64,000 nucleotides of DNA from Macrostomum lignano. Taxonomy: Eukaryota. The notes beneath the pieces are model-generated. The model made no database searches. It saw only the letters and a list, made by a program, of their open reading frames with translations, and was not told where the DNA came from. Both the position numbers and the translations under genes were made by a program. Shown here piece by piece: positions 4,763 through 64,000 of the stretch. Numbering within the stretch: position 1 is the stretch's first letter; each line of letters begins with the position of its first letter. Location of the stretch: contig NIVC01000778.1 of NCBI GenBank assembly GCA_002269645.1, positions 380,235 to 444,234 of the forward strand, in the 5' to 3' direction.

Positions 4763-18947
<14,185 letters not shown>

Positions 18948-34589: not shown

Positions 34590-35209
34590 TCTAGCACAAC
34601 CGCGAGATTTTAAATCAACTGCACTACTGTCAGTAGCTGTGTAGAAAGCAGCGATGAAATTGTGGGCTGAAATTTTTTATAAAAAGAATAGTCGAAGCTT
34701 TATACTACTTAGTAAGTAGCTTAAAATACAATATTTTGTAAGATCGGAAACATTTGCAATACGAAACACTATCACAATATCTCTTATAAATTCTACATAC
34801 ATGATCATTTGTGGCAGTGTCTATGCTTGTACTACGTACTAAGTACTGGTGGGTTAAAGTACAGATATACGTACTTTTAGACTAGAAACAATTTCAAACG
34901 AATTTCAATTAATGGAAATTGCCCAGCTCGTTAAGTATCAGGGGGGAATGGGAGAGTGGCCAAGGAGTTTTGCGCGTCGGCAGCCAGCCTATTACAAGTT
35001 AAGCAGAGTTGGTCACGGTTAGTACGCAGCTAAAGAGTGACAAATTAAACTGAGAATTTGTAACAGAAATAATTAAGAAAGTCCAACACATATTGATGCT
35101 TGCTGATTGAAATGCTCAAAAGCTAATGAACTTTTATTGAGCCTATGAAATCTATACAAATAACTTCACTCAAATTATGTGTAATAACCATAACTGGTGA
35201 ATGAACGAA

Positions 35210-35533
35210 TCAGTCTTTCTTTTGCCGATTAAAATACGGAGTATGCTTAGAATCTTTGCCGCGCAGTTTTCTAAGCCGGTCCATCTCCTCCTGGAAGTCC
35301 CGGTACTCGTCCCTGAACACGCCCATAGAGCGCAGGCTGCGGAATATCGAGCTGAAGCTGTCCAGCGGCGGGTACCAGCCAGCCCGCTGCCGGCCCCACG
35401 GCTCCGCCATCAGTCGCCTGGCTACATTGCGATCCTGAGAAGACGTTGGCCGAGCGAAGTCAACAAAAATTCGGCCAGACAGATAGGCCATCCGTTTCAT
35501 GTAATTGCTGCTGCTTGCCGCTTTTTGGGCCAT
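35210..35533 (-). CDS. MRPS33: Mitochondrial ribosomal protein S33, 107 aa, single coding exon
   Basis: YMKRMAYLSGRIF..ARPT..WYPP..LRSMGVFRDEYRDFQEEMDRLRKLRGK matches the mS33 signature. Confidence 0.92.
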   Translation of the reverse strand: MAQKAASSSNYMKRMAYLSGRIFVDFARPTSSQDRNVARRLMAEPWGRQRAGWYPPLDSFSSIFRSLRSMGVFRDEYRDFQEEMDRLRKLRGKDSKHTPYFNRQKKD

Positions 35534-36389
35534 TGCTGTTGCTTCTAGTAGAGCATGCAAACAATGCATAATGCATAATGTACTTTCAAGTGTTAATCGC
35601 AGCACTACAATCAGTGTTGCTACAGGCATTTGAAAAAAAATAGACGCAGCCGATAAAAAAAAACGCAGGCAGTACTAAAAATTATAATGAAGCTCAGAAC
35701 TACTCTATTGTACATTCATGCCTCTGCCCTGCCTACGTGGGTGTGCTCTGTGTTTTTGCATATGTACACGGCACCGTGTAAAGCAACAATTTTCTTAACA
35801 AATCCGAAGCCTGCTGTCCTTAATTTTTAGATGCGAACTGCTAGTACATTACATGTTAGATGCCAGTCAGTAGCTAATACAAGTATTAAGAAGCTGTTCT
35901 CGAGTTGCACAACTGCAGGCTGTACCCTTGTCTGTTGAGCAAATAATGATGAACGACATCAAGGAGTTCGAGGAACAAATTTACATTGCACTATTAGTAG
36001 AATACAGAGAAATGATCTAGGCCCTGAAACATCCTAGCACTGTGCCCTGGATCACATACAACTATACTGTATAAATGCACACAAGTGACTAGCAGCCCTA
36101 GGATGATTAACAACAAGATACATTAGCAACGAAACATGTTCTTATATCTAATGCATAATAGAAAATCACGACGATGCTGAGCAATACGATAGTAAAAAGG
36201 CTGAGAGTACATCAGTACATTTTATTCCAAAATCAACACGGCTACCAGCCAACCAGCAGATGTCATAAATGGTCACATGCAAAAATTTATGTATTTCCTC
36301 TTTAATCAGCAGCGGCCAGCGAGTGCACAAAAATTGGCCGATGGATATTGGCTAACAGACAAACTAGGATACGCAACTTATCCTGCACT

Positions 36390-36752
36390 TATTGGGTTGT
36401 CCAGAAAGTTCTGTCCGATTTTTTCACATGGTCTAACTTCCTTATACTAAAACTTACTTATCTATTATCCATTGTTGTTCATATTTGCCTATTAGCAATA
36501 TGTTACTCACCTTTCTACCACCACCTGCATCTAACTGAAAGTTGCTTCTTTCCAGCAAAGAATGGCACATGATAATGAGCACCTTTTGCACTGCTTGCTC
36601 TATCTATCTATTCCGCGCCATTGACCGGCATCTGCAAGGCAAGAGCTTCAACAACGAACTGGCCCTCATCTCGGAGATCGGCAACTTTTTCGACTCGATG
36701 AACATTTGTATAAAAAAATGGACAGAACTTTCTAGACATTGGACAACCTATA
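36390..36752 (+). mobile_element. Mariner deletion derivative nested in the hAT element
   Basis: Imperfect TIRs TTGGGTTGTCCAGAAAGTTCTGTCC / GGACAGAACTTTCT..GGACAACC flanked by TA. Internal YLFRAIDRHLQGKSFNNE..IGNFFDS resembles the mariner transposase C-terminus. Confidence 0.78.
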
Positions 36753-37317
36753 CATATAAGAGCAACAGTGAGTACGTATACGTGCAATATGTGTATCTCG
36801 ATCGATAGCCGATGCAAACATACATGGAAACAGCACGACAACAACAATGCAACAACTTGAAGAATAAATGTAAAAATTCATGTCATCTGTTACTCTTTCA
36901 GTTCTCACTGTCTCTACCCTCTCAGTCACTCAAAGAGCAAGATTGCGAGCATAGCTGTTCGTAATAAAATGCATGTAAAATAAAACTGATGCCTAGATCA
37001 TGCCTGGATGCATCTTTGTTGCAAACCCTGTATCCCCATATGCAGTGTTTGGCAAAGTTCATTTTTGGAAAAGTTCAATTCATTTTTAAAATGATATTGA
37101 AAGAATAGCAGAATGAGATCATTTTTAACTGTTTGGCAGTAGAATGAGGTAAAGAAATGGTTGTTACTCGAGCATGACTGACCAAGTAGGAAATGCCCTT
37201 GCATAAAGTTCAAAAGTTCGTTGTACGAAAGTTCCTTTTTCGTGAACTTGCCCAACACTGCCTATCTATTTATGTCTATGTAAGCCCAAAAATCATTGTT
37301 ACCAAAAGTTACCGGCG

Positions 37318-37860
37318 TCACTTTTTGAAATAACTGGCGATGGTAGACTCGGTCGCCTTCTCCTCCAACTTTCTCTTTTTCTCTTTGAGGCCCTCAGTCT
37401 CCTTCTCCAGTGTCTTGCGCTCAATCGCTAGGGCAGCTACCTGTCGCTGATATTCGTCAAGCATTGCGGCAGCTCTGTCCGCTTGCGCATCTACCTCCAG
37501 TCTCCTCTTCCGTATGCTCTCCTCCTTTGCCTGCAACTGTGCAGAGTGTGTTGCCTTCTTAATTTCCTGTGCAATTTCTACTGCCAACTCTCTCTCCTTT
37601 GCCAACTTCTTCTGCTTCTCCTCATTCTCCTCCCGCTGCCGCTCCAGGTGCTGCTTCCAGCTGTGCCGAGCATGAAAGCCTGCGTTGATGTACGCGTCAT
37701 TGAAGTGAAACGTTTCACAAGTCAAACCGGTCGACTTTAGGAAACCTCGGGTAAGCAGACAGCCATCTATGGTGCGGATGTCCAGATTGCTTCTTTTCTT
37801 TGAAAAAAGGTCTGTAAGATCGGCAAACACACGCTCCACTGCCGCATTGCCACTTAAGTC
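37318..37860 (-). pseudogene. C-terminal fragment of a hAT-like transposase (dimerisation region plus coiled coil)
   Basis: SGNAAVERVFADL..KKRSNL resembles the hAT dimerisation motif, followed by a charged coiled-coil tail. It sits inside the TIR-bounded element. Confidence 0.7.
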
Positions 37861-38779
37861 ACCAACAAAACAGCTAGCAAGTAAAAACGCAGAATGAAAA
37901 AAAACGCAGAAAAAAACGCACAAACGCAGATTTTTCAAAGAAAAAACGCAGCTGCGTTAAAAACGCAGCCTGTAGCAACACTGACTACAATCATAGCTGG
38001 GCTACCCCCTCAAATAGGTTTTTCCCAGTTATACCCGATTTACAGAATTGAAGGATTATAAATAAATGGTTATTGTCCAATTGCCAAGACAATTAAGACA
38101 AGATAATAAAACATTCGTCTGACACTTATTCTAGTTGTTCAACAATATTAAAAAATTAAAGATAGACATTTATTCTAAGGAAGAATAGCAAATACTACAC
38201 TGGAGACCCAACACTTCCATTTCTATCCTATGCTTATTTACACTGTAAACTGTTAAGGTCTACAGAGGGTCAGAAGATATAAAATTTCAAATATAGACCC
38301 TAAGCTGTTTGGGTTTATAAACTAAATTCATTATTTAAATATGAACTAATTATTGCTTACACAACCATTACTTGATTCATTTCTTTACCATATATTACCA
38401 ATCTTCCGTAAATTTCTGTTGCACCTGCTAGTGCTACTAAAACAGCCTACATGTTCATATTTTAATAATAATTAACCTTTCATTTTCAAATAAAGAAGTT
38501 TCTTTTTCTTACTATTTGTTACTTAATAAATTGTAAATCACTTGGAAAACCTTTCTGCGTCAGCTGAGAAAATGGAAAGCCAAAGACAGTGCATTATGAA
38601 GTTTGTTGTTGTAAAAAAGTGCAAAACTCCTTTATGTTCTGTGTTAATGTTAATGGATTAATGCATATTAATCATTATCAGTTACCATAGCAAACTTAGG
38701 AATTAATAAGTTAAGACTTTTTTAATTCTAACACATTTGCCATTAATGGAAGTTAAGATTATCATTAATAGTGCCCGAC

Positions 38780-47005: not shown

Positions 47006-47129
47006 GTAGCTAGTGCAAATGTTACTTCCGCTAATGCAATAATCGCTTTCTCAGGTTGTGCAACAATCCACGTCTCAGCGAGCGCAATAATCTCTTTTTT
47101 AGACAGCGCAGTAATCAGCTTCTCAGCTA

Positions 47130-50100
47130 GTGCAATAATCCTTGGTTTATTAATAGCAATAATCCTTGATTAATCAAGTGCAATGATCCTTGGTTTATCA
47201 AGTGCAATAATCCTTGGTTTATCAAATGCAGTAATCTTTGGCTTATCAAGTGCAATAATCCTTGGTTTATCAAGTGCAATAATCCTTTGTTTATCAAGTG
47301 CAATAATCCTTGGTTTATCAAGTGCAATAATCCTTGGTTTATTAAGTGCAATAATCCTTGGTTTATCAAGTGCAATAATCCTTGGTTTATCTAGCGCAGT
47401 AATCCTTGGCTTATCAGGTGCAATAATCCTTGGTTTATCAAGTGCAATATTTGTTTATCAAGTGCAATAATCCTTGGTTTATCAAGTGAAATAATCCTTG
47501 GTTTATCAAGTGCAATAATCCTTGGCTTATCAACTGCAATAATCCTTGGTTTATCAAGTGCAGTAATCCTTGGCCTATCAAGTGCAATAATCCTTGGTTT
47601 ATCAAGTGCAATAATCCTTGGTTTATCAAGCGCAGTAATCCTTGGCCTATCAAGTGCAATAATCCTTGGCTTATCAAGTGCAATAATCCTTGGTTTATCA
47701 AGTGCAATAATCCTTGGTTTATCAAGTGCAGTAATCCTTGGCCTATCAAGTGCAATAATCCTTGGTTTGCCAAGAGCAATAATCCTTAGTTTATCGAGTG
47801 CAGTAATCCTTAGTTTTCCAAGTGCAGTAATCCTTGGTTTATTAAGAGCAATAATCCTTGGCTTATCGAGTGCAGTAATCCTTGGTTTGCCAAGAGCAAT
47901 AATCCTTGGTTTATCAAGTGCAATAATCCTTGGTTTATCAAGTGCAATAATCCTTGGTTTATCAAGTGCAATAATCCTTGGTTTATCAGATGCAATAATC
48001 CTTGGCTTATCAACTGCAATAATCCTTGGTTTATCAAGTGCAATAATCCTTGGCTTATCAAGTGCAATAATCCTTGGTTTATCAAGTGCAATAATCCTTG
48101 GTTTATCAAGCGCAGTAATCTTTGGCCTATCAAGTGCAATAATCCTTTGTTTATCAAGTGCAATAATCCTTGGTTTATCAAGTGCAATAATCTTTGGTTT
48201 ATCAGATGCAATAATCCTTGGCTTATCAACTGCAATAATCATTGGTTTATCAAGTGCAATAATCCTTGGCTTATCAAGTGCAATAATCCTTGGTTTATCA
48301 AGTGCAATAATCCTTGGTTTATCAAGCGCAGTAATTTTTGGCCTATCAAGTGCAATAATCCTTGGTTTATCAAGTGCAGTAATCCTTGGCCTATCAAGTG
48401 CAATAATCCTTGGTTTATCAAGTGCAATAGTCTTTGGTTTATCGAGTGCAGTAATCCTTAGTTTTCCAAGTGCAGTAATCCTTGGTTTATTAAGAGCAAT
48501 AATCCTTGGTTTATCGAGTGGAGTAGTCCTTGGTTTATTAATATCAATAATCCTTGAATAATCCAGTGCATTAATCCTTGGCTTATCAAGTGCAACATTC
48601 TTTACTATCAAGTGAAATAATCCATGGCTTATCAAGTGCAATAATCCTTGGCTTATCAAGTGCAATAATCCTTGGTTTATCAAGTGCAATAATCCTTGGT
48701 TTATCAAGTGCAATAATCCTTGGTTTATTAAGTGCAATAATCCTTGGTTTATCAAGTGCAATAATCCTTGGTTTATCTAGCGCAGTAATCCTTGGCTTAT
48801 CAGGTGCAATAATCCTTGGTTTATCAAGTGCAATATTTGTTTATCAAGTGCAATAATCCTTGGTTTATCAAGTGAAATAATCCTTGGTTTATCAAGTGCA
48901 ATAATCCTTGGCTTATCAACTGCAATAATCCTTGGTTTATCAAGCGCAGTAATCTTTGGCCTATCAAGTGCAATAATCCTTGGTTTATCAAGTGCAGTAA
49001 TCCTTGGCCTATCAAGTGCAATAATCCTTGGTTTATCAAGTGCAATAATCCTTGGTTTATCAAGTGCAATAATCCTTGGTTTATCAAGTGCAATATTCCT
49101 TGGCTTATCAACTGCAATAATCCTTGGTTTATCAAGTGCAATAGTCCTTGGTTTATCAAGCGCAGTAATCCTTGGCCTATCAAGTGCAATAATCCTTGGT
49201 TTATCAAGTGCAATAATCCTTTGTTTATCAAGTGCAATAATCCTTGGTTTATCAAGCGCAGTAATCCTTGGCTTATCAAGTGCAATAATCCTTGGTTTAT
49301 CAAGTGCAATAATCCTTGGTTTATCAAGCGCAGTAATCTTTGGCCTATCAAGTGCAATAATCCTTGGTTTATCAAGTGCAGTAATCCTTGGCCTATCAAG
49401 TGCAATAATCCTTGGTTTATCAAGTGCAATAGTCTTTGGTTTATCGAGTGCAGTAATCCTTAGTTTTCCAAGTGCAGTAATCCTTGGTTTATTAAGAGCA
49501 ATAATCCTTGGTTTATCGAGTGCAGTAGTCCTTGGTTTATTAATATCAATAATCCTTGAATAATCCAGTGCATTAATCCTTGGCTTATCAAGTGCAACAT
49601 TCTTTACTATCAAGTGCAATAATCCATGGCTTATCAAGTGCAATAATCCTTGGTTTATCAAGTGCAATAATCCTTGGTTTATCAAGCGCAGTAATCTTTG
49701 GCCTATCAAGTGCAATAATCCTTGGTTTATCAAGTGCAGTAATCCTTGGCCTATCAAGTGCAATAATCCTTGGTTTATCAAGTGCAATAATCCTTGGTTT
49801 ATCAAGTGCAATAATCCTTGGTTTATCAAGTGCAATATTCCTTGGCTTATCAACTGCAATAATCCTTGGTTTATCAAGTGCAATAGTCCTTGGTTTATCA
49901 AGCGCAGTAATCCTTGGCCTATCAAGTGCAATAATCCTTGGTTTATCAAGTGCAATAATCCTTTGTTTATCAAGTGCAATAATCCTTGGTTTATCAAGCG
50001 CAGTAATCCTTGGCTTATCAAGTGCAATAATCCTTGGTTTATCAAGTGCAATAATCCTTGGTTTATCAAGCGCAGTAATCTTTGGCCTATCAAGTGCAAT

Positions 50101-50920
50101 AATCCTTGGTTTATCAAGTGCAGTAATCCTTGGCCTATCAAGTGCAATAATCCTTGGTTTATCAAGTGCAATAGTCTTTGGTTTATCGAGTGCAGTAATC
50201 CTTAGTTTTCCAAGTGCAGTAATCCTTGGTTTATTAAGAGCAATAATCCTTGGTTTATCGAGTGCAGTAGTCCTTGGTTTATTAATATCAATAATCCTTG
50301 AATAATCCAGTGCATTAATCCTTGGCTTATCAAGTGCAACATTCTTTACTATCAAGTGCAATAATCCATGGCTTATCAAGTGCAATAATCCTTGGCTTAT
50401 CAAGTGCAATAATCCTTGGTTTATCAAGTGCAATAATCCTTGGTTTATCAAGTGCAATAATCCTTGGTTTATTAAGTGCAATATTCCTTGGTTTATCAAG
50501 TGCAATAATCCTTGGTTTATCAAGCGCAGTAATCTTTGGCCTATCAAGTGCAATAATCCTTGGTTTATCAAGTGCAGTAATCTTTGGCCTATCAAGTGCA
50601 ATATTCCTTGGTTTATCAAGTGCAATAGTCCTTGGTTTATCGAGTGCAGTAATCCTTGGTTTTCCAAGTGCAATAATCCTTGGCTTCTTGAGTGCAGTAA
50701 TCCTTGGTTTGCCAAGAGCAATAGTCCTTGGTTTATCGAGTGCAGTAATCCTTGGTTTTCCAAGTGCAGTAATCCTTGGTTTATTAATAGCAATAATCCT
50801 TGGCTTCTTGAGTGCAGTAATCCTTGGTTTGCCAAGAGCAATAGTCCTTGGTTTATCGAGTGCAGTAGTCCTTGGTTTATTAATAGCAATAATCCTTGGC
50901 TTATCGAGTGCAGTAATCTA
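47130..50920. repeat. 24-bp satellite (GTGCAATAATCCTTGGTTTATCAA)n with higher-order duplications
   Basis: Directly visible. A variant anchor recurs at ~48563, 49565 and 50307, and another at 47391 and 48777. Confidence 0.98.
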
Positions 50921-51719: not shown

Positions 51720-51960
51720 TCTAACCATAACCCCAACCCTAACCATAACCCTAAATTGAATATTTTGTTCACGAGTTTTTGCATGATGCTTGCATTATTT
51801 TTTGCATGACGCTTCCATAAATATTTTTAATAGGCTACTACATGAGCTAAGTTATAAGCTACCCTAACCCTAGCCCTAAGCCAAATCTTAACGCTATACC
51901 CTGAACCTAACACTAAACCTTGAAACCCTAACACCAATCCTAACACTAACCCTACAGCCT
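51720..51960. repeat. Degenerate CCCTAA-like (telomere-like) repeats near the Helitron 3' end
   Basis: AACCCTAACC, CCCTAACCCTAGCCCTAA and similar. Confidence 0.6.
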
Positions 51961-51989: not shown

Positions 51990-53935
51990 TGCACCAAATT
52001 TTTGTGAACAGAATATTCTCAGTGAAATGAAATATTTGAAGCTTTATTTATTCCCGGCATAGCACATCACTACAAAGAACGTGCATATACGCGTACCATT
52101 TAATACTGGCATACTTTAAGCGTAGGATGATACGAAACTGCGTGAATAAATTCGCCGAACTATTAAACATTTCTGTTAGTTTCACGATTATTATACACAG
52201 TACATGTACAAAGTAACAGTACTGTTCAACTGTACTGTTACGAGCTACAACAAACAAAAAACAACAAACGACCGGTACGTGCTTTTAATTAAATTTTAAA
52301 CAACCGAAAATTGACGTTCAGCAGTTAAAACAATATTTAAACCAACACATGCATTTATTCAAATGATATGATATGATCTTCTGCTGCTAATACGAGCGTA
52401 GCAGGTGAAAATTTGCAATGATGTAATAATTAATTAACAAAAGGATAGACTGTCGCTTCAGCAGATGGTGCCATCGACAAGCAGCCAGTATAGCTTTAGC
52501 AGTACAAAAATGTACATGTATATGCCATCCTGACTACCTGCCGACTCGCGTCACTGCTCAATTGCATGCATTGGGTGTAAGCAAAGGTAGAGACATTCAT
52601 TCTCAAACCAAACATTAAGTCGCTCCGCTCTGCTTAAGGCTGCTACAGAGCTTGACTGCAAATGCTCCTTTTAGAGTCTGGAACCACAGGGTATATAGAG
52701 CAGCTCCTATACACCATTCACAAACTCTTTTAGCCCAGTTAAGATGCAGTCAACCTACTCTCAATGAGGGCTGCTTCATAAATTCCAATTATACATACAT
52801 GTTTCACCTGCTTATACCTGTACTATTTCTGTTTACTGACTGTATTTTATGGTCTGTTCAGCGACTGTATTAGTGACTGCATTATTGTCTGTTTAGAGGC
52901 TGTATTGTCTGTTAAACGACTGTATTGTCTGTTTAGAGGCTGTATTGTCTGTTAAACGACTGTATTGTCTGTTTAGAGGCTGTATTGTCTGTTAAACGAC
53001 TGTATTGTCTGTTTAGAGGCTGTATTGTCTGTTAAACGACTGTATTGTCTGTTTAGAGACTGCATTGTCTGTTTAGAGACTGTATTGTCTGTTTAGAGAC
53101 TGCATTGTCTGTTTAGAGACTGTATTGTCTGTTTAGAGACTGTATTGCCTGTTTAGAGACTGTATTGTCTGTTTAGAGGCTGTATTGTCTGTTAAACGAC
53201 TGTATTGTCTGTTTAGAGACTGTATTGCCTGTTTAGAGACTGTATTGTCTGTTTAGAGGCTGTATTGTCTGTTTAGAGGCTGTATTGTCTGTTAAACGAC
53301 TGTATTGTCTGTTTAGAGACTGTATTGCCTGTTTAGAGACTGTATTGTCTGTTTAGAGGCTGTATTGTCTGTTAAACGACTGTATTGTCTGTTTAGAGGC
53401 TGTATTGTCTGTTAAACGACTGTATTGTCTGTTTAGAGGCTGTATTGTCTGTTAAACGACTGTATTGTCTGTTTAGAGGCTGTATTGTCTGTTAAACGAC
53501 TGTATTGTCTGTTAAACGACTGTATTGTCTGTTTAGAGACTGCATTGTCTGTTAAAGGCTGTATTGCCTGTTTAGACATTGTATTGTCTGTTTAGAGACT
53601 ATATTGTCTGCTTAAGGCTGTATTGTCTGTTTAGAGGCTGTATTGCCTGTTTAGAGGCTGTATTGTCTGTTTAGAGGCTGTATTGTCTGTTTAGAGGCTG
53701 TATTGCCTGTTTAGAGGCTGTATTGCCTGTTTAGGGATTGCATCATTGTCTGTTAAAGGCCTGTATTTATTCTGTAATTTCTACTTTAAGTACTGTTACA
53801 TTTATGTCCTATGAGTATAAGGAGGAACTTACGAAACATTCCTCGTAAATAGGATTTACTCAATGCACTCTCTCAGGGCTATCAGTTCATTGAGACTCTA
53901 CGCGACTTTGATTTCACTCTCAGCCATCAGACGCT
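51990..53935. repeat. Copy 1 of a ~2-kb internal direct duplication, including a 20-bp satellite (TGTATTGTCTGTTTAGAGGC)n at 52880-53760
   Basis: Matches 57070-59140. The core 52434-52920 is apparently identical to 57499-57985 (offset 5065). Confidence 0.95.
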
Positions 53936-53968
53936 CGGTCAAAAAAGTGGCGCGCCAACTGTGGCAAC

Positions 53969-55540
53969 TCACTGATACGAAGTGCTGTTCTGTACGCTGT
54001 GATCATCGAACGACATTCTGCTCGACTCATCCTGACCGTCGACACCTCCACTGCGGTGAAACTGACTCCGGTCATCACCCGTCGACACTCGTCTGTATCG
54101 AATCTGCGAGAAGAAAAAATTTATAAGGATATAAAATATGCGTAACAAGAAAGTCCTATTAAGCATGAATACATAAAAGCAACACAATAAGTACTGTTCT
54201 CTTTGCTATTCAATTTGCGATTTTCAAAATAAATAGCTTAACTGAACACCTGTCTAACCTGGTAACCTAACAAACTTTATTATATTTAATCTTAATACTA
54301 AAAGTGGTGCGTTGTTTGTCTGTATAATCAACTAAATTTGTAGAAAATCACTCACCTTTTTGCCATTTCCGAAGTCCCTCACAATTTCCTTCGAGTGTTT
54401 GTCATAAAACTCAAACAAGGCAGCAGGCTCCCGAATTATGGTCACACTTTCGTCTCCAATCTCATCAGCACCAAGTCCTGGAGTAGGCACTGGAGCGGGC
54501 ACAGGTTCAAACCGGGTATCGCCTTCCTTTGCATTCCTATACCAGTCAGCCAAGACTCTGGCTTCACCATCGTCACTGTTGCATTTTACGTCAGAGTTCG
54601 AGCATCCCAACGTGACGGAGCCCGAATACTCCTGCACCTTTGCTCTTCTTATGGACAAAACATCGCCGATGTTCCACCTGTCCACTTGAGCTGAGGACGA
54701 ACCCCAAAACGTGCAGCTTACAGAGCCGAAGGTTCGGTCAACCAAAGTCACTTTGGCTACGTTAACCTTTTTCCCAGCACGCGTTCGGACTTCTTCAGAC
54801 GGTTGCCTGGCGTCGATCACTCCAAGCACATCGACGATTCTGATAGTGAAAGGGAGCAAAGGGACTTTTTTTAACTATTTGCACACTAACTTAAGCATCA
54901 CATTAGATTTCTATTTGTACACTAACAGGAGCATCATGAAGCTAATAACCCAGGCTTCGTACAGTGTTGCGATGATAAATATTTTCAAACACAAGACAAA
55001 CTAACTGTCACCCAAAAACACGATTACATGTACTTTCACTCCGCGATATTTGAGCACTAATACATGACGAAAACTACTAAATCAATTAGTCACTCACCTG
55101 TCCAATCCAGTCTGTTGCAGTTGATTAATGCTAGTGTAATCAATTACTGGATCTCGAGCAACCGGCACTTCGTTGCTTCTATAGATGAAGCCCTTGGAAT
55201 CCACGGAAACGGTCATCTCAAGTGGATTGTCCGTACACTTGTACTCTGGCTTGGCAGTCTTCACCATCCCGCCGGATATGCGAACGGCTTCAGCATCGTT
55301 GCATACTTCCCAGATAGCTTGCAAATCCTTACCGAAGACGCTGACTCGCATCTCAGATGAGTCGTCCACCAAGATGAACGAAAACACTTGGCCCTGACCT
55401 TTGTTGTTATTATACGTGTGAACGTCTTTCAGGTTCGTCACAAGGCCAGTGACAGGCGTAGGCATTTGCCCAACTGTCAGACCGGCAATCCCATCCTTCT
55501 TCGACTTCTTTTTCAAAGGTGACTCTGAATAAGAGGCCAT
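53969..55540 (-). CDS. RPA70-like single-stranded-DNA-binding protein (two OB folds, DBD-A/B), about 353 aa, 3 exons
   Basis: Exons 55098-55540, 54356-54839 and 53969-54103, phase-consistent GT-AG. Motifs GQGQVFSFILVDDSSEMRVSVF, VKTAKPEY..NPLEM, IVDVLGVI, VTLVDRT..VSCTFWG, AKVQEYSG, EARVLADWY follow RPA1. No DBD-C/Zn finger or DBD-F. Confidence 0.88.
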
Positions 55541-55619: not shown

Positions 55620-56350
55620 CTTTAACTGTAAGACAACAAAATTGGCTCAACAAATCACAAGCTATATATATGTAGAAATAAAAGTAGCCACGAAAAAAAC
55701 ACCACCTCCCCTCCAGCCCAGTACATTGTACTCAATTTTGCATTCATTTTTACTTTATTACACAATCTAATTGGCTGGACACACAACCCAACCCAATCAC
55801 TCCAGTGCCCAGCATTAAAGCACACACTGCACCCTCTGATGTACGCTAAGGTCTCCTCACTTTTCTCACCTAATCCTTTTGTTTGTTTGCTATCTCGTTT
55901 TATGGTGACACAATTCTCACCGACTGACTCAGCAAGTGTAGGCAATACTTTAAGAGTTCGCGGCCGCGTGTACTTCACTGCACAAACAAAACTTGTATGG
56001 CGCGGCTGACTGGTTGAGCCATTTTCGCACCTTCTAAGCCGGGAAAGAAAAATAGGCGACCCTCCTCAAGTCAGGCTGCATGGCCACCAGTACGCTAGAC
56101 AATTTTTAGGCCAATCGCCGCTCTAAAGCCCTGACCTGCACAACCGACCAATAGGAAGCCTCAGACTTGTACAGAAAACCACCGTAAGGCTCAGCGAAGC
56201 GACGACGCACAACCCATAACCCCTAATTTTATTCGCCCCTACACCTCAGTTTCAGTGCCTATATAGTCTGATATAGTCTGATTCATATATTTAGAGTCAT
56301 ATATTTCTATATTAGAGTCTCAACAAATCATATTTTCTCAATCAAATCAT
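55620..56350. promoter_or_regulatory. Putative bidirectional promoter between the RPA-like and zinc-knuckle genes
   Basis: CCAAT/ATTGG boxes at ~55641, 55770, 55793, 56111 and 56148. TATA-like motifs near 55663 and 56261. A-rich contexts before both ATGs. Confidence 0.5.
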
Positions 56351-56363
56351 CAACAAATCAACA

Positions 56364-56976
56364 ATGCATATTACACAAATATTTGGTGGCGGCGGCGGCG
56401 GTAGGCGAGGCGGCGGTCAGCGCGGCGGCTGGCAGCGCGGCAGGGGCGGCCCACGCGGAAAGAGCAGTGAGTACCTTCCTAAGACACTGTAAATCTTGTG
56501 CTTTGAGTACATTCGAGTATAGTCTTAAATTTTATCTAATTGTAGCCTGTTACTGACTTTCATGCTACTCGTATTATTACTGATAAATTTTGCAAAAATT
56601 TCCCTTCTTTTAATTGCCAGTCGTTTGTTTCTTCTGTGGAGGCCGCCACCGCGTTGCCAGCTGCAACGCGATGAAGGCCGCCGCCCGCCTTCTGCAGCAG
56701 CAACAGCAGCAGCAACAGCAGCAGCAGCAGCCGCAGCAGCAGCCGCAGCAACAGCAGCAGCCGCAGCAACAGCAGCAGCATCAGCAGCCGCAGCAACAGC
56801 AGCAGCATCAGCAGCCGCAGCAACAGCAGCAGCAGCAGCCGCAGCAACAGCAGCAGCATCAGCAGCCGCAGCAACAGCAGCAGCATCAGCAGCCGCAGCA
56901 ACAGCAGCAGCAGCAGCCGCAGCAGCAGCAACAGCAGCCGCAGCAACAGCAGCCGCAGCCAATGAATGAATTGTAA
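56364..56976 (+). CDS. Small RGG-box / CCHC zinc-knuckle / polyQ protein, 152 aa, 2 exons
   Basis: Exon 1 56364-56466 (MHITQIFGGGGGGRRGGGQRGGWQRGRGGPRGKS) with donor A|GTGAGT. Intron 56467-56620 has a pyrimidine tract and CAG. Exon 2 56621-56976 (IVCFFCGGRHRVASCNAMKAAARLLQQQ..QPQ..PMNEL*). Phase 1 matches across the junction. Confidence 0.72.
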
Positions 56977-57069
56977 ATTCCAAAATAAACTATGACTTTT
57001 TTGACTTTTGATTAAAATCCGCGATAGACTTATTTATTTTTTTGGACTTTTGAAACAATGGCGCACCAG

Positions 57070-59140
57070 TACAAAGTTTTGTGAACAGAATATTCTAATG
57101 CCATGAAATATTCAAAGTATAATTCATTCTCACCATAGCATGTCATGACAAAGAATGACCGTACATACACACTTACCATTTCATACTGGCTTACTTTGAA
57201 AGTAGAACAATACGAATCTGCATGAATAATTTCGCCGAACTATTAAACATTTCTAAGTTTTACGATTATTATACACAGTACAAAAAACTGTTTTATCCAT
57301 TTTTAACTGCTATAACTAACAAAGAAGCAAACGGCGAATTAAATTTTAAACTATTAACAACCACAAATTGAAGTTTAAAAATTGAAACAAAAGTTAAACA
57401 AACACTTGTATTTATTCAAACAATATATGATCTGCTTCTGACTACTAACGCTGAGCAAGTTTAATATTTCGTACAGATATTGAAAAATGTAATAATTATT
57501 AACAAAAGGATAGACTGTCGCTTCAGCAGATGGTGCCATCGACAAGCAGCCAGTATAGCTTTAGCAGTACAAAAATGTACATGTATATGCCATCCTGACT
57601 ACCTGCCGACTCGCGTCACTGCTCAATTGCATGCATTGGGTGTAAGCAAAGGTAGAGACATTCATTCTCAAACCAAACATTAAGTCGCTCCGCTCTGCTT
57701 AAGGCTGCTACAGAGCTTGACTGCAAATGCTCCTTTTAGAGTCTGGAACCACAGGGTATATAGAGCAGCTCCTATACACCATTCACAAACTCTTTTAGCC
57801 CAGTTAAGATGCAGTCAACCTACTCTCAATGAGGGCTGCTTCATAAATTCCAATTATACATACATGTTTCACCTGCTTATACCTGTACTATTTCTGTTTA
57901 CTGACTGTATTTTATGGTCTGTTCAGCGACTGTATTAGTGACTGCATTATTGTCTGTTTAGAGGCTGTATTGTCTGTTAAACGACTGTATTGTCTGTTAA
58001 ACGACTGTATTGTCTGTTTAGAGGCTGTATTGTCTGTTAAACGACTGTATTGTCTGTTTAGAGGCTGTATTGTCTGTTAAACGACTGTATTGTCTGTTTA
58101 GAGACTGCATTGTCTGTTTAGAGACTGTATTGTCTGTTTAGAGACTGCATTGTCTGTTTAGAGACTGTATTGTCTGTTTAGAGACTGTATTGCCTGTTTA
58201 GAGACTGTATTGTCTGTTTAGAGGCTGTATTGTCTGTTTAGAGACTGTATTGCCTGTTTAGAGACTGTATTGTCTGTTTAGAGGCTGTATTGTCTGTTTA
58301 GAGGCTGTATTGTCTGTTTAGAGGCTGTATTGTCTGTTTAGAGGCCGTATTGTCTGTTTAGAGGCTGTATTGTCTGTTTAGAGGCTGTATTGTCTGTTTA
58401 GAGACTGTATTGCCTGTTTAGAGGCTGTATTGTCTGTTTAGAGACTGTATTGCCTGTTTAGAGACTGTATTGCCTGTTTAGAGACTGCATTGTCTGTTTA
58501 GAGGCTGTATTGCCTATTTAGAGACTGTATTGTCTGCTTAGAGGCCGTATTGTCTGTTTAGAGACTGTATTGTCTGTTTAGATACCGTATTGTCTGTCTA
58601 GTGACTGTATTGTCTGTTTAGGGACTGTATTGTCCGTTTAGAGACCGTATTGTCTGTAGAGACTGTATTGCCTGTTTAGAGGCTGTATTGCCTGCTTAGA
58701 GGCTGTATTGTCTGTTTAGAGACTGTATTGTCTGTTTAGAGACTGTATTGTCTGTTTAGAGACTGTATTGCCTGTTTAAAGGCTGTATTGTCTGTTTAGA
58801 GGCTGTATTGTCTGTTAAGAGGCTCTATTGTCTGTTTAGAGGCTGTATTGTCTGTTTAGAGGCTGTATTATTGTCTGTTTAGAGACTGTCTGCATAGTGA
58901 CTGTATTATTGTCTGTTTATACCTGTACTACTATCTGTTTAGTGACTGTATGATCAGTGGCTGTAGTTTTGTCTGTTAAATGACTGTATATCATGTTCGT
59001 GTAAAACTGTTATAGATGAGTATAAGAAAGAACTTATGAAACATCCCTCGTAAATAGGATTTACTCAATGTACTCTCTCAGGGCTATCAGTTCATTGAGA
59101 CTTCACGCGACTTTGATTTCATTCTCTACAGTCAGACGCC
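57070..59140. repeat. Copy 2 of the ~2-kb internal direct duplication, with the 20-bp satellite at 57945-58890
   Basis: Matches 51990-53935. Confidence 0.95.
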
Positions 59141-59197
59141 AGACACTTCTCAAACACATCTCTTGGACTTGAACTCACGAATAGCGTCCGAAAATGC

Positions 59198-62100
59198 TTA
59201 GTCTCCAGTCAGCACCTCTGGGTACACCACGTTCCTCGTCTTAGTTCCAGAAGTACGGACACGGACATTAGCAGCGTTCCTCGCTCGCGACAGAGCCGTA
59301 TACAGCTGGCCATGAGTGAAGCAACCGACAGCGAGGTCCACGCCAACTGTGTCCAGAGACTGTCCCTGCGACTTGTGGATCGTCAGGCAGAAGCTCGGCT
59401 TCACAGGGAACTGCAGCCGCTTGAAACTGACGGGGAGGTCCGCATTGCTTGGAATCAGCGGGATTCGCGGCAGAAGAATCTCGTCTCCCGTGAACTGGCC
59501 GGCGGCAATCTTGCATCTAAGCACGTTCTCGCCCATCGCGAGTATGATGAGCCGCGTACCATTGCACAATCGTGGCGGGTTGATGTTCCTGAGAAGAACT
59601 ACTGGCATACCCTCCTTTAGCCTCAGCAAGTGAATCGGAAAGTTCGGGGCATCCAGCTGGTTGAGCAACTCAGGCGGGAAGTGCGTAGCGGCATCCTCAT
59701 CGGCCACAGTGTCTATCGAGCGGTACTCCCGCAGGCTTCCGGGGAACATGCCCAGACACGTCTCATTGATGGCATCCACTGAGTCATTGTAAGGCGCCAG
59801 GATCGCTCGGCTTGCAAAGTAGCTGTCTCTCTCCACTGGTTCTTCAAACGATGGGTACACAAAATTGATTAGATCAGTGAGAGGCCCTTCCGCAGAAATC
59901 ACGATCTCGGCTGGCAGAGACACTTTCTCCTCCGCATCCTGCTTCATTGTTCCGGATCCGATCTGTGGAGGGTTAAAATGTCGAATATTTCATAACCTAT
60001 ACACACTTTTAAGCATAGACATTCCTAAATGACGCAAACTTAAAAAAATTGAGCTCAAAAACAAATCCGCGTCTAGTGTATCATTGTCAATCATTTAATA
60101 AACTGATGAAATCAGACTTACCTGCTTGAGTAGCTCGGTGTACATCTGATACGCTACAGAATCGGAACTGCTCAGCATCCGGATGTTTCTCGTCAGGCGA
60201 TGCCGTTGGAAGTATTTCCACAGTGAGGATCGGCTAACACACGCCATGACACTGTTAGCACGAGTCCCATGCACCACAACGGGTAGGAGCTGCCGGAAGT
60301 CACCAGCGCACACAAACACCAGTCCGCCAAATGGCGAGTCCTGCTTCCGCACATCTCGCAAGCACCGGTCGACCGCCTCCAAATCCTTCCGGTTTGTCAT
60401 AGAAATCTCGTCCCACACAATTAGACGCGCTGTGCGAAATACAGCAGCTTGTTTGGACTGCACTCCAACAGCGCACACGTCCTTGTTTGAGCGTAATACC
60501 CGAATTGGTATCTTGAACCTGACATGGAAAAATTTGGGTATCATACAGCAGAGGAAGTATTCACATATTTACTTGTTTAATTATTCGTAAGTTACTAATA
60601 ATTTACAAATTAAATATAAACAACTCACGTGGAATGCGCAGTTTGTCCACCTGGCAACAGAGTCGCTGCGATTCCTGAAGCCGCAACGGCGAGAGCGACT
60701 TCACCCCGGCTGCGCACGAAGGCCAGCAAAACCTCCAGCAGGAAAGTCTTGCCAGTACCAGCGGGCGCGTCCAGGAAGTGCAAGCCGCCGTTGCCGCTCA
60801 CAAGATCCTGAGTCACTGACTCGTACACGTCTTTCTGCTCGTCTGTCAGCATTGGTAAGCGTGCCTCAGTAATCTGCGCTTGCTCAATCGTATCGAACTG
60901 CATCGGTCCATCTTGAGGCATCACGGAGGCCGCAGGCAAGCCGTACTCTGGCAGGCTTCTCCCACCCATGGAGGTCAGCATGCTCTGCAGCTCGCGGAGC
61001 GCTAGGTCAGTAATCTCCTCGGCACTTAAATCTCGATGGTGGAACCGCAGGTCCTCGCACATATTTCGCAAAAGAGCACCAAAGGTCGTTGCCATCCTCA
61101 GGCTCGCCCCATATGAGAATGACAGCCAGAATGTGTCTCAGGGCTCTTGGCATTCTTGACTGAACGGCCTCAGCTAGGCACCGCCGCCAGTGGTCATCTC
61201 GCTGCAGCAGACAAGTGCCATGCAAGCAGCCTTGGCGCTCGGATGCACAACGCCGTCCACGGTCTGCAGCGCCTCGAAGCTGGTTGGTCCCTTGACTCGC
61301 AAAAGAAGCATGCGAACATAAAATAAATCACCAGTTCTTGGGCTCACCGTGTACATGCGTGCAACGTTTGTGTTCCGCACTACACCCGGGTGGCCATCGA
61401 CTTTCGCGCCTCGCTTGGCCCGCCGCCACACTCTTTCACTGGCATGCCACACGAAGTAGGACGGCACCTCCGTGTAGAGCAAGGACCGAGCAAACTCGTC
61501 AGTACGGCACAGCTTGAAAAATGCTGTCAACGTAGAGTCCCTCGGCGTCCTGGCTCTAGCACTTGCGGTCTGCTCGTTGAAATACACGAGCTGCTCCTCC
61601 GACTTGTGAACGCAGAGCCGGATGACCGCCGGAAATCTGTCATGCACCTGATCAGAAGGTGGAGAGAAATAATCGCTTTTAAGTTTTTTCTGAATACAAA
61701 AAGGCCACAGTTTTGCAATATTTACTCTTAAAATTTAAAATATTTATTACTTCAAAGCCCAAAATTGTATTCACAGCTTCCATTGGGCCAATGTAGCGCG
61801 CAGACAGATACTCCTTGATTTCATCACGCGGCCTCTCTCCATCGTTTGCCGCTACCGTTTGCGTCGGCTGCTGACTACCCGCACTCTGTTCTGTCGCTTC
61901 AGCAGAATTCTGATTGGCATTGACTTTGAACGTTGCCATGTCGCCGCCCTTCAGCAAGTACTTGATCACGTACTTGGACCGACTTTACAGTGGCACAAAC
62001 TTCAACGTTCATGTGGCACGCAAACTGGAGCAACAGTTCAGGGCTATAAGGCACAACCCACCTGTGGTTTTAAGGAAAAAAACATTGTCAAACGTTTCCA

Positions 62101-64000
62101 ACATAAAAATACAAGAGGCACCTAATACTCATGACTGCGCCTGTTGTCCATGCGAATGCTGCGGCCTTTGAACAGTTTTGTCCACTGTAAATCCACCCAT
62201 CTCAGGCGACAGTCTGCGGTACAGTGGGTAGCCAGTATCGCTGGTCAGCGTCACCTGCTGGAACTCCTTCGGAAAGCCCTTGCTGCATTCGCCATTCTCC
62301 ATGCACGGGCAGCGCTGGGTTTCCTTGCCACAAGGGCCATGGATCATGTGCGTTTTCACAGCTCATACAGCACAGGCTGCTGCTGTGGGTCCGGAATCTC
62401 GGCAGACACGATGTCATCGTATCGGTCCGGAGTCACCCGCTGGCCACTCGCTAGCCACAGCAGAAAGTGCACATGGGGAGACCTAAATTATCAAGAAAGT
62501 ATCAAGACATCTTTCAGTCCAATTATCCGATCTGTATCGAATTTGCATCACACAAACCCACCTGTATTTAGTATCTTTATAACGATATAACTATATAAAT
62601 TTCATAAAACATAATACTGAGACTTGTACTCACCACGCTTTTGGTACTCTAGCGAGCAGACGTGCGCAGCTCTTTCCCATAGCGCTTCGTTAGCTGGGGC
62701 CAGCAGAGCTTTCTTCTTCATTTCAAAGACTCGGCTAACAATGTCCGGTCGGTGTTCAGCCCGCTGTCCGGCCAGCAGCTGGGCGCTGATCTCCGGCCAA
62801 TTCGGATTGCATGTTTGCCGTGACAAACAGGTCCGGCTTACCAAAGCTTGTGAACATAGGTCATAGCGTCCTGCAGCCTCTCCATCAGGTACCTTGGCCC
62901 GCCAACGAAGCTTGAGGACAGAAGCACATGTGCGGGCTTGCCTATGTCACTCGGATCTCTGTCCGTAGATCTGCCATCAGCTGCAAACAGAGCGTCCCGC
63001 AGACCGCTGTACGTCTCGCTGCGCAGGTCCTGCTGATGGGTCCGCAAATACAGCAGCCTCTCTGCCTCAATCTTGCACACATGTCCACCAGGTACTGCTG
63101 AACAACCTTCGGCCATAGTGCAGCACACTGAACTGGCCCGCTCGCACCATGATTTCGCTTGCATAGTATTTTCATGGGGTCAGTTTCTTGTCATTACTCA
63201 TCCGCAACTCCGGGTGCCAGCCATCTTCGCCATTCGGGAACAGCAGCACATACTCCAGCGGGTCATATGAGCGGTGCGTCTCACTGATTCGCTGAGAACC
63301 GCCCCCACGCAGTTGAATCACGACGTCCCGACTGGCCGGTGCGTCCTCATTGTCCTCAACGATCAGGATACCGACCTCATTTGCCGTAGGCAAGTTGTAG
63401 CGCCTGATTTTAAACGGAGTTTGTGGGACACAAATTCTGTACAAATTGAATCACGTACTTATTACGCATTTTGCGAGTTCGAGTTACAATCAAAATTCAT
63501 AACTCATTTTGATTTCGCTTTCGTTTACATTTTTAAATTTCGTTATAACAAACACGACTAACTTACCGAATGTGTTCCCCAGATGGTCGACGGTCAGGGT
63601 GAATCACAATTCGCGCATCTCCCAGCTCTGGGTCTTGGCTAATTCGCTCAGCAGCAGCCTTCAGGCTGCGGACATAGCCGTTGCACTCGTGAAGCAGCGT
63701 CTGCAGCAGCTCCAGTAGTCCGGCTTTACCTTTGGCTGAGACTCTGGCGGCTTTCGAGTTCGCGATCATTGAAATACACCTGCCATCCCTGAGCTTCAGC
63801 AGAATCTCTGCAAACAGCGGCGCCGTGCGGTGATGCATCTGGCCGCTGATGATGAAGCTAGGACACCAGCCTGGCACCAACCGCAGTTTGGCACCCAGCG
63901 ATGTCAGGTGCAGCGCCGAGTTGTAGCTCTGATGTTGGCCAGGAACGCGGCACTCAATCTGTGCCGCCCCATGTACAGATCCGCCAGCACTTGAGGCACG
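59198..64000 (-). CDS. Helitron RepHel (HUH endonuclease plus PIF1-type SF1B helicase), partial, spliced, with frameshifts
   Basis: Exons about 63567->64000, 62634-63436, ~62130-62482, 61751-62061, 60629-61647, 60122-60518, 59198-59962. Motifs EYQKRG|LPHVHFLLW (HUH), WVVPYSP, KYVIKYLLKG, DAPAGTGKT, IVWDEISM, GDFRQLLPV, QFPVKPSFCLTIHKSQGQSL, HGQLYTALSR. Confidence 0.95.

What the first reader, a model, noticed from the sequence alone, without database searches (positions are those of the whole stretch)
56364..56976. Hidden spliced RGG / zinc-knuckle / polyQ gene inside a Helitron
Seen: the ORF track shows only a polyQ run. Joining A|GTGAGT (56467) to CAG|TC (56620) gives a clean 152-aa protein: Met, an RGG/RG box, CFFCGGRHRVASC (CX2CX3HX4C knuckle), then an ~90-residue Q/P/H tract. 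The CAG run has codon-like CAA/CCG/CAT interruptions and ends at a stop. Established: RGG plus CCHC knuckles characterise nucleic-acid chaperones (CNBP/Gis2, retroviral nucleocapsid), and RGG/Q-rich regions promote condensates. Known Helitron accessory genes include RPA, proteases and endonucleases; I do not know of this type. Inference: an element-encoded nucleocapsid-like or condensate-forming accessory protein acting on the ssDNA or RNA intermediate.
Basis: partly seen in the sequence, partly recalled or inferred. Interest (0 to 1): 0.9.

Follow-up and report, generated by a model that had tools for sequence, protein, structure and literature searches.

The report
Passenger zinc-knuckle gene in decayed Helitron
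A small two-exon reading frame for a glycine/arginine-rich, zinc-knuckle, glutamine-repeat protein really does lie between the two genes of a broken Helitron transposon in the flatworm Macrostomum lignano, but it points the opposite way, is about 70% triplet repeat, and nothing yet shows that it works for the transposon.

Summary
The ATG is at 56364. Exon 1 is 103 nt, the GTGAGT...CAG intron 154 nt, exon 2 356 nt. The stop is at 56974-56976, giving 152 codons plus stop. The frame holds a tri-RGG box, one CX2CX3HX4C knuckle and an 89-residue Q/P/H tract.

It is more than chance. The knuckle motif occurs once in six frames of the window. The intron looks like those of the neighbouring genes. A Macrostomum lignano database protein (A0A1I8JBM3) starts with the same exon-1 peptide, the same junction residue and an identical knuckle, then continues into a reverse-transcriptase fragment.

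The window is M. lignano. The frame does lie between Helitron genes, but on the opposite strand. RepHel (59198-64000, minus) has about eight frameshifts and one premature stop. The RPA-like gene (54332-55540, minus) is unbroken.

The polyQ "codon-like" interruptions are copies of one 27-nt unit, so they say little about selection. No expression data, no second genomic copy and no other Helitron copy could be examined.

Best reading: a passenger (captured or nested) low-complexity gene unit with a retroelement-type knuckle. The accessory-chaperone idea is untested and disfavoured. Interest is modest.

The parts
56111..56266 (+). Promoter-like stretch: CCAAT at 56111-56115 and 56148-56152, TATATAG at 56260-56266, about 100 nt upstream of the ATG. 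The ATG has A at -3.
   Evidence: Read directly. These are short motifs in AT-rich DNA, so the evidence is only compatible, not statistical. The stretch also holds degenerate copies of the 20-bp satellite motif.
56364..56466 (+). Exon 1: Met plus a Gly/Arg-rich tri-RGG box (34 codons plus 1 base)
   Evidence: TRF sees a degenerate GGC array at 56388-56450. The same peptide, with in-frame length changes only inside the G/R run, opens P0007.
56467..56620 (+). Phase-1 intron, 154 nt, GTGAGT...TTTCCCTTCTTTTAATTGCCAG, GC 0.33
   Evidence: Same size, composition and splice motifs as the introns of RepHel and RPA on the other strand. P0007 uses the same junction, Ser-Ile-Val.
56621..56976 (+). Exon 2: knuckle, short Ala-rich linker, 89-residue Q/P/H tract, MNEL, TAA
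56626..56664 (+). C-x2-C-x3-H-x4-C knuckle (CFFCGGRHRVASC)
   Evidence: The only match in six frames of the window. Identical in P0007. Best non-flatworm match is a Hibiscus Retrotrans_gag protein with four knuckles of the same spacing, E 6.8e-6. No Pfam zf-CCHC hit. PDB nearest is LIN-28 at E 0.7 with a one-residue gap.
56694..56959 (+). CAG-based array with a 27-nt higher-order unit (polyQ with periodic P and H)
   Evidence: period 27, 9.7 copies, 88% matches; self-matches; codon list.
56984..56989 (+). AATAAA, 8 nt after the stop codon
   Evidence: Read.
54332..55540 (-). RPA-like gene of the Helitron. Two exons (55540-55098 and 54839-54332), 316 codons, unbroken. Transcribed divergently from the RGG frame, about 820 bp apart.
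   Evidence: Pfam REPA_OB_2 2e-13 and an OB fold. 57-64% identity to three M. lignano OB-domain proteins. Intron 55097-54840.
59198..64000 (-). RepHel pseudogene. Rep (Helitron_like_N) and PIF1 helicase domains, colinear with Helraiser residues about 185-1475. About the first 184 residues lie beyond the window end.
   Evidence: About six AT-rich GT-AG introns. About eight frameshifts and one premature stop outside the introns, counted by eye.
57072..59142 (.). Module A'-satellite-B' between the RepHel stop and the 3' end of the RGG frame
   Evidence: 86-90% identical to 51995-53943. 20-bp satellite at 57948-58977.
51995..53943 (.). Module A-satellite-B downstream of the RPA-like gene (second copy of the module)
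   Evidence: 20-bp satellite at 52883-53734.

Best explanation
The frame is a real, intact two-exon unit on the + strand. It is carried as a passenger inside, or nested in, a decayed Helitron of Macrostomum lignano, in head-to-head arrangement with the element's RPA-like gene and tail-to-tail with the RepHel pseudogene.

Its only non-repetitive core is a short N-terminal peptide plus one retroelement-type CCHC knuckle. The RGG box and the polyQ tract are a GGC-type triplet expansion and a CAG-type (27-nt unit) expansion around that core.

The unit exists in at least one more copy in the genome. There it is followed straight after the knuckle by a reverse-transcriptase fragment that starts in mid-domain.

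Shown: the anatomy, the position, the strand, the second copy, and the state of RepHel.

Inferred:
- It reached this place by DNA-level capture or rearrangement, because it keeps an intron and abuts the end of a duplicated 2-kb module.
- It may be transcribed from its own TATA-type promoter.
- If translated, it would be a nucleic-acid-binding protein prone to forming condensates.
- It has no demonstrated role for the Helitron.
For: - Gene model.
- The intron matches the local introns of RepHel and RPA in length (110-258 nt), GC (0.26-0.36) and GTRAGT...CAG ends.
- The knuckle is not a chance motif.
- P0007 (UniRef100_A0A1I8JBM3, M. lignano) has the same N-terminal residues 1-7, the same PRGKS, the same junction Ile and 15/15 knuckle residues, then an RVT_1 fragment.
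- This knuckle spacing is documented in LINE ORF1 and retroviral Gag proteins (PMC2330053, PMC3391268, PMC5016936). It also occurs in a Retrotrans_gag protein that Pfam zf-CCHC misses too.
- Opposite strand to RepHel and RPA.
- RepHel has about eight frameshifts and one stop.
- The 3' end of the frame lies about 75-95 nt from the end of a duplicated module.
- Species: M. lignano.
Against: - No transcript evidence could be consulted.
- About 70% of the frame is triplet repeat, and the CAG tract is open in five of six frames.
- At the frameshift density seen in RepHel, an intact 459-nt frame is expected about 40% of the time, so intactness is not evidence of selection.
- No parent host gene was found. 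An exhaustive search of 1.84 billion representatives gave only P0007 with this knuckle.
- The element's termini were not found, so 'inside one element' rather than 'between two adjacent fragments' is not settled.
- Whether other copies of this Helitron family carry the unit is unknown. If they all do, 'passenger' is the wrong word.
Confidence: 0.5

Rival explanations
1. One reading: a Helitron-encoded accessory protein. It would be a nucleocapsid-like chaperone or condensate former, kept by the element family to act on its single-stranded DNA or RNA.
For: - It lies between RepHel and RPA.
- RGG box plus a Gag-type knuckle.
- It sits head-to-head with the ssDNA-binding RPA-like gene, about 820 bp apart, which could be a shared control region.
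- It is present in more than one copy in the genome.
Against: - It is antisense to both element genes.
- It is not known in any described Helitron. A literature search for Helitron plus zinc knuckle gave nothing relevant.
- The one other copy continues into a LINE-type RT fragment, and no Helitron link is visible for it.
- The host element is dead.
- The repeat parts evolve by slippage, and no selection test was possible.
Confidence: 0.12
2. An untranslated look-alike: repeat-rich DNA in which a GGC run, an AT-rich spacer and a CAG minisatellite happen to frame a relic knuckle. It would be duplicated passively with the surrounding sequence, and gene finders would model it as a gene.
For: - 28% of the window is tandem arrays.
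- The CAG tract is open in five of six frames.
- The interruptions are periodic copies of one 27-nt unit.
- A third of GT/AG pairs join in frame.
- The promoter-like stretch contains degenerate satellite motifs.
- No protein with the full architecture exists in 1.84 billion representatives.
- P0007 is a chimera with a TE fragment.
Against: - The knuckle is expected by chance about 1e-4 times in a frame of this size.
- The ATG, a strong donor, polypyrimidine-CAG acceptor, stop and AATAAA are all in the right order and strand.
- All non-repeat residues are identical in P0007, with the same junction.
Confidence: 0.25
3. A relic of a retroelement gag/ORF1 gene, from a LINE or LTR element. Its nucleocapsid knuckle has been cut loose and given a new start and tail by repeat expansion. 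Its place in the Helitron would be a nested insertion, not a capture.
For: - CX2CX3HX4C is a documented knuckle variant of LINE ORF1 and retroviral Gag.
- The best non-flatworm match is a Retrotrans_gag protein.
- P0007 joins the knuckle to a LINE-type RT fragment.
- LTR elements make up 21% of the M. lignano genome (PMC5730564).
Against: - There are no other gag, capsid or RT remains in or next to the frame.
- A canonical intron sits just before the knuckle, which retrotransposed copies normally lack.
- The RT part of P0007 starts in mid-domain, as expected of a 5'-truncated LINE inserted into the unit rather than of common descent.
Confidence: 0.13

Closest known systems
Helitron gene capture (passenger gene fragments in maize, bat and other Helitrons; end-bypass model)
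   Same: A non-transposase sequence with an intron, carried between Helitron parts and next to a rearrangement breakpoint. It is present in more than one genomic copy. It keeps genomic (intron-containing) structure, as expected for DNA-level capture.
   Different: Here the unit looks like a complete mini-gene (start, intron, stop, poly(A) signal) and not a fragment of a recognisable host gene. No parent gene was found. The capture event itself is inferred, not shown.
Helitron accessory genes (RPA-like, OTU protease, AP endonuclease of Helentrons)
   Same: Placed next to RepHel within the element. A predicted nucleic-acid binder, like RPA.
   Different: Known accessory genes are co-oriented with RepHel and recur across copies and species. 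This frame is antisense, and its recurrence across copies is unknown.
Retroelement nucleocapsid / LINE ORF1 CCHC knuckles, including the CX2CX3HX4C variant (helena, locust Nimb elements, HERV-W/H Gag)
   Same: Identical Cys/His spacing. An aromatic residue after the first Cys and Gly before the His. Basic surroundings. A significant match to a Retrotrans_gag protein with the same spacing.
   Different: It has a single knuckle. There is no capsid/MHR or other Gag domain. An intron lies just upstream. It is not part of a retroelement here.
CNBP/Gis2 and LIN-28 cellular zinc-knuckle proteins
   Same: CNBP combines an RGG box with CCHC knuckles. LIN-28 knuckles are the nearest solved structures by sequence (HxVASC shared).
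   Different: CNBP has seven knuckles and LIN-28 has a cold-shock domain plus two, all with CX2CX4HX4C spacing. The PDB match is not significant (E 0.7). No homology is shown.
Low-complexity RNA-binding proteins with RGG and Q-rich regions (FET-type, prion-like domains)
   Same: A tri-RGG box plus a long Q-rich tract (50% Gln), the composition associated with condensate formation.
   Different: The resemblance is in composition only. There is no RRM or RanBP2 finger and no sequence relationship.

Membership tests
Helitron (canonical RepHel element) | Rep (HUH) endonuclease domain | tested here: met
   Pfam Helitron_like_N in two ORF pieces, E 8.7e-9 and 5.5e-12. Colinear with the Helraiser Rep region.
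Helitron (canonical RepHel element) | PIF1-type helicase fused downstream of Rep | tested here: met
   PIF1, Pif1_2B and UvrD_C_2 hits. Helraiser 7lcc_A E 2.3e-81.
Helitron (canonical RepHel element) | Uninterrupted RepHel reading frame (autonomous copy) | tested here: not met
   About eight frameshifts and one premature stop outside the AT-rich introns. The N-terminal ~184 residues are off the window. Assembly indel errors cannot be excluded.
Helitron (canonical RepHel element) | 5'-TC and 3'-CTRR termini with a subterminal hairpin | tested here: inconclusive
   The 5' end is beyond the window. No GC-rich hairpin was found near the ends of modules A and A'.
Helitron accessory gene | Same orientation as RepHel | tested here: not met
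   The RGG frame is on +; RepHel and RPA are on -.
Helitron accessory gene | Recurs in the same place in other copies of the element family | not testable with these tools
   No other genomic copy could be fetched. The one related protein, P0007, has no DNA on record.
zf-CCHC zinc knuckle (Pfam PF00098 type) | C-x2-C-x4-H-x4-C spacing and a match to the profile | tested here: not met
   The spacing is x2/x3/x4. There is no Pfam hit even at E 10. A bona fide Gag protein with the same spacing is also missed by Pfam, so this failure does not exclude a zinc knuckle.
Retroelement Gag/ORF1 knuckle, CX2CX3HX4C variant | The variant spacing, with similarity to knuckles of proven Gag/ORF1 proteins | tested here: met
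   P0005 (Hibiscus, Retrotrans_gag) E 6.8e-6 over three knuckles. The spacing is documented in PMC2330053, PMC3391268 and PMC5016936.
Retroelement nucleocapsid | Part of a Gag or ORF1 protein (capsid/MHR or other ORF1 domains upstream) | tested here: not met
   No Gag or ORF1 domain in either exon or the flanks. An RGG exon and an intron lie upstream instead.
RGG/RG box | Three RGG spaced by 0-4 residues (tri-RGG, as commonly defined; definition from my own knowledge) | tested here: met
   RGG at residues 15-17, 20-22 and 27-29 of exon 1.
CNBP/Gis2 | Tandem array of about seven CCHC knuckles with an RGG box after the first | tested here: not met
   There is one knuckle only and no significant match.
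Helitron-captured host gene | An identifiable parent gene elsewhere in the host genome | tested here: inconclusive
   Only P0007 was found among 1.84 billion representatives. A 30-residue query has little reach, and the host genome could not be searched at DNA level.

The most novel reading that the evidence does not exclude
The RGG/knuckle/polyQ unit is a true, family-wide accessory gene of a Macrostomum Helitron lineage. It would be an antisense, separately promoted, nucleocapsid-like protein paired head-to-head with the RPA-like gene, and the first Gag-knuckle-type protein recruited by a rolling-circle DNA transposon.
Probability: 0.1. Interest if true: 0.75.

Novelty: new member of a known kind. 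Interest (0 to 1): 0.3.

Why it matters
If the unit is only a passenger, it is one more example of Helitrons carrying and copying foreign gene-like DNA. The new details would be that the host is a flatworm and that the cargo may be a complete mini-gene. It would also show how triplet-repeat expansion around a tiny zinc-knuckle core can produce something that looks like a new protein-coding gene.

If it proved to be kept in every copy of the family, it would add a nucleocapsid-like protein to the short list of Helitron accessory functions. It would also link rolling-circle DNA transposons to a protein module otherwise typical of retroelements.

In both cases the locus is unannotated in the public M. 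lignano annotation. That annotation excluded transcripts overlapping repeats (PMC5730564).

Tried and rejected
- **Word-index homology searches.** Queries with the knuckle ORF and with the N-terminus of P0007 returned no candidates. One earlier query was too short.
- **Exact-product look-ups.** Look-ups for the M. lignano RPA-like proteins, for P0007 and for four window ORFs found nothing. Exact cluster look-up of six window ORFs found nothing.
- **Metagenome scans.** A scan for a degenerate knuckle DNA pattern and one for RPA relatives found nothing.
- **Pfam on both exons.** Nothing, even at E 10.
- **PDB.** Only non-significant LIN-28 knuckles.
- **Rfam and tRNA scan of 51-64 kb.** Nothing.
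- **Hairpin search for Helitron 3' termini** near the module ends. Nothing convincing.
- **Wasik et al. 2015** (source of the annotation behind P0007) is not held.
- **Rejected idea: the minus strand carries the real feature.** Its frames give only poly-Leu/Arg, poly-Ala and a stop-ridden poly-Cys, with no start or signal structure.
- **Rejected idea: absence from NCBI/Logan proteins argues against expression.** The surely expressed MRP-S33 of the same window has no Logan source either. The GenBank annotation also dropped repeat-overlapping transcripts.

Full report
**1. What is there**

- An ATG at 56364 opens 34 codons: MHITQIF followed by a Gly/Arg-rich run with RGG at residues 15-17, 20-22 and 27-29.
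- One further base precedes GTGAGT at 56467.
- The next 154 nt are AT-rich (GC 0.33, against 0.69 and 0.63 in the flanking coding parts). They end in a pyrimidine tract and CAG at 56620.
- The two bases after the intron complete an Ile codon.
- The frame then reads VCFFCGGRHRVASC (C-x2-C-x3-H-x4-C, 56626-56664), a short Ala-rich linker, 89 residues of Gln/Pro/His, MNEL and TAA (56974-56976).
- 103 + 356 nt = 153 codons, so 152 residues. Half of them are Gln.

I checked this by arithmetic and exon-wise translation.

Upstream lie two CCAAT motifs (56111, 56148) and TATATAG (56260). The ATG has A at -3, and AATAAA starts 8 nt after the stop. These short motifs are compatible with a gene but prove nothing.

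**2. How much of it could be chance**

- A CAG array is open in five of six frames, and ORFs are indeed listed there on both strands. 'Ends at a stop' carries no weight.
- Only 6 GT and 5 AG candidates exist between the two ORFs, and 10 of the 30 pairs join in frame without a stop. The in-frame join alone is not significant. The only equal uses a disfavoured GAG acceptor inside the knuckle.
- The CAA, CCG and CAT 'interruptions' recur with a 27-nt period (TRF: 9.7 copies, 88% matches; self-matches; codon list). They are copies of a few changes, not many independent synonymous ones.

Three things are not chance.
- The knuckle pattern occurs once in all six frames of the 64-kb window. Shuffles expect 0.12 per window, about 1e-4 for a frame of this size.
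- The intron is of the same kind as those of the neighbouring genes on the other strand. Four RepHel introns of 110-159 nt and one RPA intron of 258 nt all have GC 0.26-0.36 and GTRAGT...CAG ends.
- There is an independent relative, described next.

**3. A second copy**

An exhaustive phmmer search used the 30 residues around the knuckle as query, against 1.84 billion representative proteins. It gave four hits.
- Two are unrelated Cys-rich or repetitive proteins (P0004, P0006).
- P0007 is UniRef100_A0A1I8JBM3 of Macrostomum lignano, 114 residues. It begins MHITQIF, then a G/R run that differs from the window only by substitutions and in-frame length changes. It continues ...GGWQRG..PRGKS, then Ile, then VCFFCGGRHRVASCN, identical to the window. 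An independent gene model in a paralogous copy therefore uses the same exon junction.
- Straight after the knuckle, P0007 continues as a reverse-transcriptase fragment that starts in mid-domain (RVT_1). The simplest reading is a copy of the unit hit by a 5'-truncated LINE. This is an inference, because no DNA for this protein is on record.
- P0005 is a Hibiscus protein with a Retrotrans_gag domain and four knuckles of the same x2/x3/x4 spacing (E 6.8e-6).

Pfam zf-CCHC misses the knuckles of P0005 as well as ours. The Pfam null is therefore not decisive.

The literature records CX2CX3HX4C as a regular variant in ORF1 of jockey- and Nimb-clade LINEs and in HERV-W/H Gag (PMC2330053, PMC3391268, PMC5016936). 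The nearest solved structures are LIN-28 knuckles. They are not significant (E 0.7) and need a one-residue gap.

**4. Where the window comes from**

The RPA-like ORF's best relatives are M. lignano proteins (57-64% identity). The MRP-S33 ORF of the window (35210-35533, minus) is found exactly on NCBI contig NIVC01003990.1 of GCA_002269645.1. That contig is colinear with window 46366-29517 at 94-99% identity. NIVC01000000 is the Mlig_3_7 assembly of M. lignano (PMC5730564).

The window is therefore M. lignano, from an allelic or homeologous copy of that locus. P0007 is a paralogue in the same species.

The same paper states that simple and tandem repeats make up 15% and LTR elements 21% of the genome. 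It also states that the GenBank annotation excluded transcripts overlapping repeats. Absence of this frame from NCBI proteins is therefore uninformative.

The surely expressed MRP-S33 has no Logan source in the collection either. The protein collection thus cannot speak to expression.

**5. The Helitron**

On the minus strand, 64000-59198 carries Helitron_like_N, PIF1, Pif1_2B and UvrD_C_2 domains in colinear ORF pieces. Frame-by-frame comparison with Helraiser (PDB 7lcc_A, E 2.3e-81) shows colinearity from about residue 185 to 1475. The first ~184 residues would lie beyond the window.

About six gaps are AT-rich GT-AG introns. Outside these I count about eight frameshifts and one premature stop. 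RepHel as it stands is a pseudogene, unless some of these are assembly indels.

The RPA-like gene (55540-54332, minus; REPA_OB_2 2e-13) has two exons in frame and no break.

The RGG frame lies between the two, but on the plus strand. It is head-to-head with RPA, the starts about 820 bp apart, and tail-to-tail with RepHel.

At the frameshift density of RepHel (about one per 490 coding nt), an unbroken 459-nt frame is expected roughly 40% of the time. Its intactness is therefore not evidence of selection.

**6. Local architecture**

A 2-kb module occurs twice at 86-90% identity. It consists of about 900 bp of unique sequence A, a 20-bp satellite, and about 130 bp B.
- One copy is at 57072-59142, directly after the RepHel stop.
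- The other is at 51995-53943, after the RPA gene.

The RGG frame ends 75-95 nt from the end of A'. RGG plus RPA thus sit between two copies of the module, and the frame abuts a rearrangement breakpoint. This fits an internal duplication, two adjacent element fragments, or an end-bypass type of capture. I could not tell which. No terminal hairpin or CTRR end was recognisable.

**7. Interpretation**

The best-supported reading (confidence about 0.5) is a passenger unit. It is a small, intron-bearing, gene-like sequence with a retroelement-type knuckle core, padded by GGC- and CAG-type expansions. It is carried in a dead Helitron and present at least twice in the genome. It is possibly transcribed from its own promoter. 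If translated, it would be a nucleic-acid-binding, condensate-prone protein.

Against it are the antisense orientation, the lack of any precedent, the dead host element, and the only other copy having no visible Helitron link.

An untranslated look-alike (0.25) remains a serious rival, because about 70% of the frame is repeat and no expression data could be consulted.

A nested gag/ORF1 relic (0.13) would explain the knuckle type and the RT neighbour of P0007. It does not explain the intron or the absence of any other retroelement remains.

**8. Novelty and score**

Helitrons carrying foreign gene-like DNA are well known. This would be a new member of that kind, in a flatworm, with an unusual cargo. 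A family-wide nucleocapsid-like Helitron gene would be new and interesting (0.75), but I give that about 0.1. Overall interest is 0.3.

The decisive evidence is descriptive and available in public data: spliced reads at 56466/56621, and a copy-by-copy survey of the unit's neighbours in Macrostomum assemblies. A functional test of a role in transposition lies outside what this report may propose.

Noticed in passing
window 35611-37984: A 2.37-kb segment with perfect 17-bp terminal inverted repeats and an 8-bp duplication (ATTGTAGT). It is absent from the otherwise 98% identical contig NIVC01003990.1, which has the undisturbed site with one ATTGTAGT. This is a hAT-type insertion polymorphism between haplotypes or homeologues. 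It holds an ORF at 37321-37956 (minus) with no Pfam hit.
   Followed up: partly
window 51995-53943 and 57072-59142: Direct duplication of a 2-kb module (unique A, 20-bp satellite TATTGTCTGTTTAGAGACTG, short B) at 86-90% identity. One copy follows the RepHel stop and the other follows the RPA-like gene. The origin is unresolved: internal duplication, tandem elements, or a separate satellite-bearing element inserted twice.
   Followed up: partly
window about 51720-51960: Degenerate telomere-like CCCTAA/CCTAA repeats directly beyond the end of module A, about 2.4 kb beyond the stop codon of the RPA-like gene.
   Followed up: no
window 47129-50918: A 3.8-kb array of a 24-bp satellite (158 copies, 85% matches) next to the Helitron region. 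In all, 23 tandem arrays cover 28% of the window, many of them inside introns of host genes.
   Followed up: no
window 25590-34676 (minus), 35210-35533 (minus), 8746-9291 (minus), 1844-3481 (plus): Host genes: a GPR155-like gene (Mem_trans exon at 34131-34676, DEP exon at 25590-26018), an intron-less MRP-S33 gene, a PDZ-domain exon, and a 545-residue ORF with a C2H2 finger. The Helitron therefore sits in gene-bearing DNA, not in a pure repeat desert.
   Followed up: partly
window 56240-56363: The promoter-like stretch upstream of the RGG frame is built of short repeats (ATATAGTCTG x2, CATATATTT/TAGAGTC x2, ATCAACAA x2) that resemble the 20-bp satellite unit. The 'TATA box' may itself be satellite-derived.
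   Followed up: no
tools: The word-index protein search returned no candidate for a 48-residue query cut from P0007, although P0007 is a cluster representative in that collection. Null results of that tool for short or Gly/Gln-rich queries should not be read as absence.
   Followed up: partly
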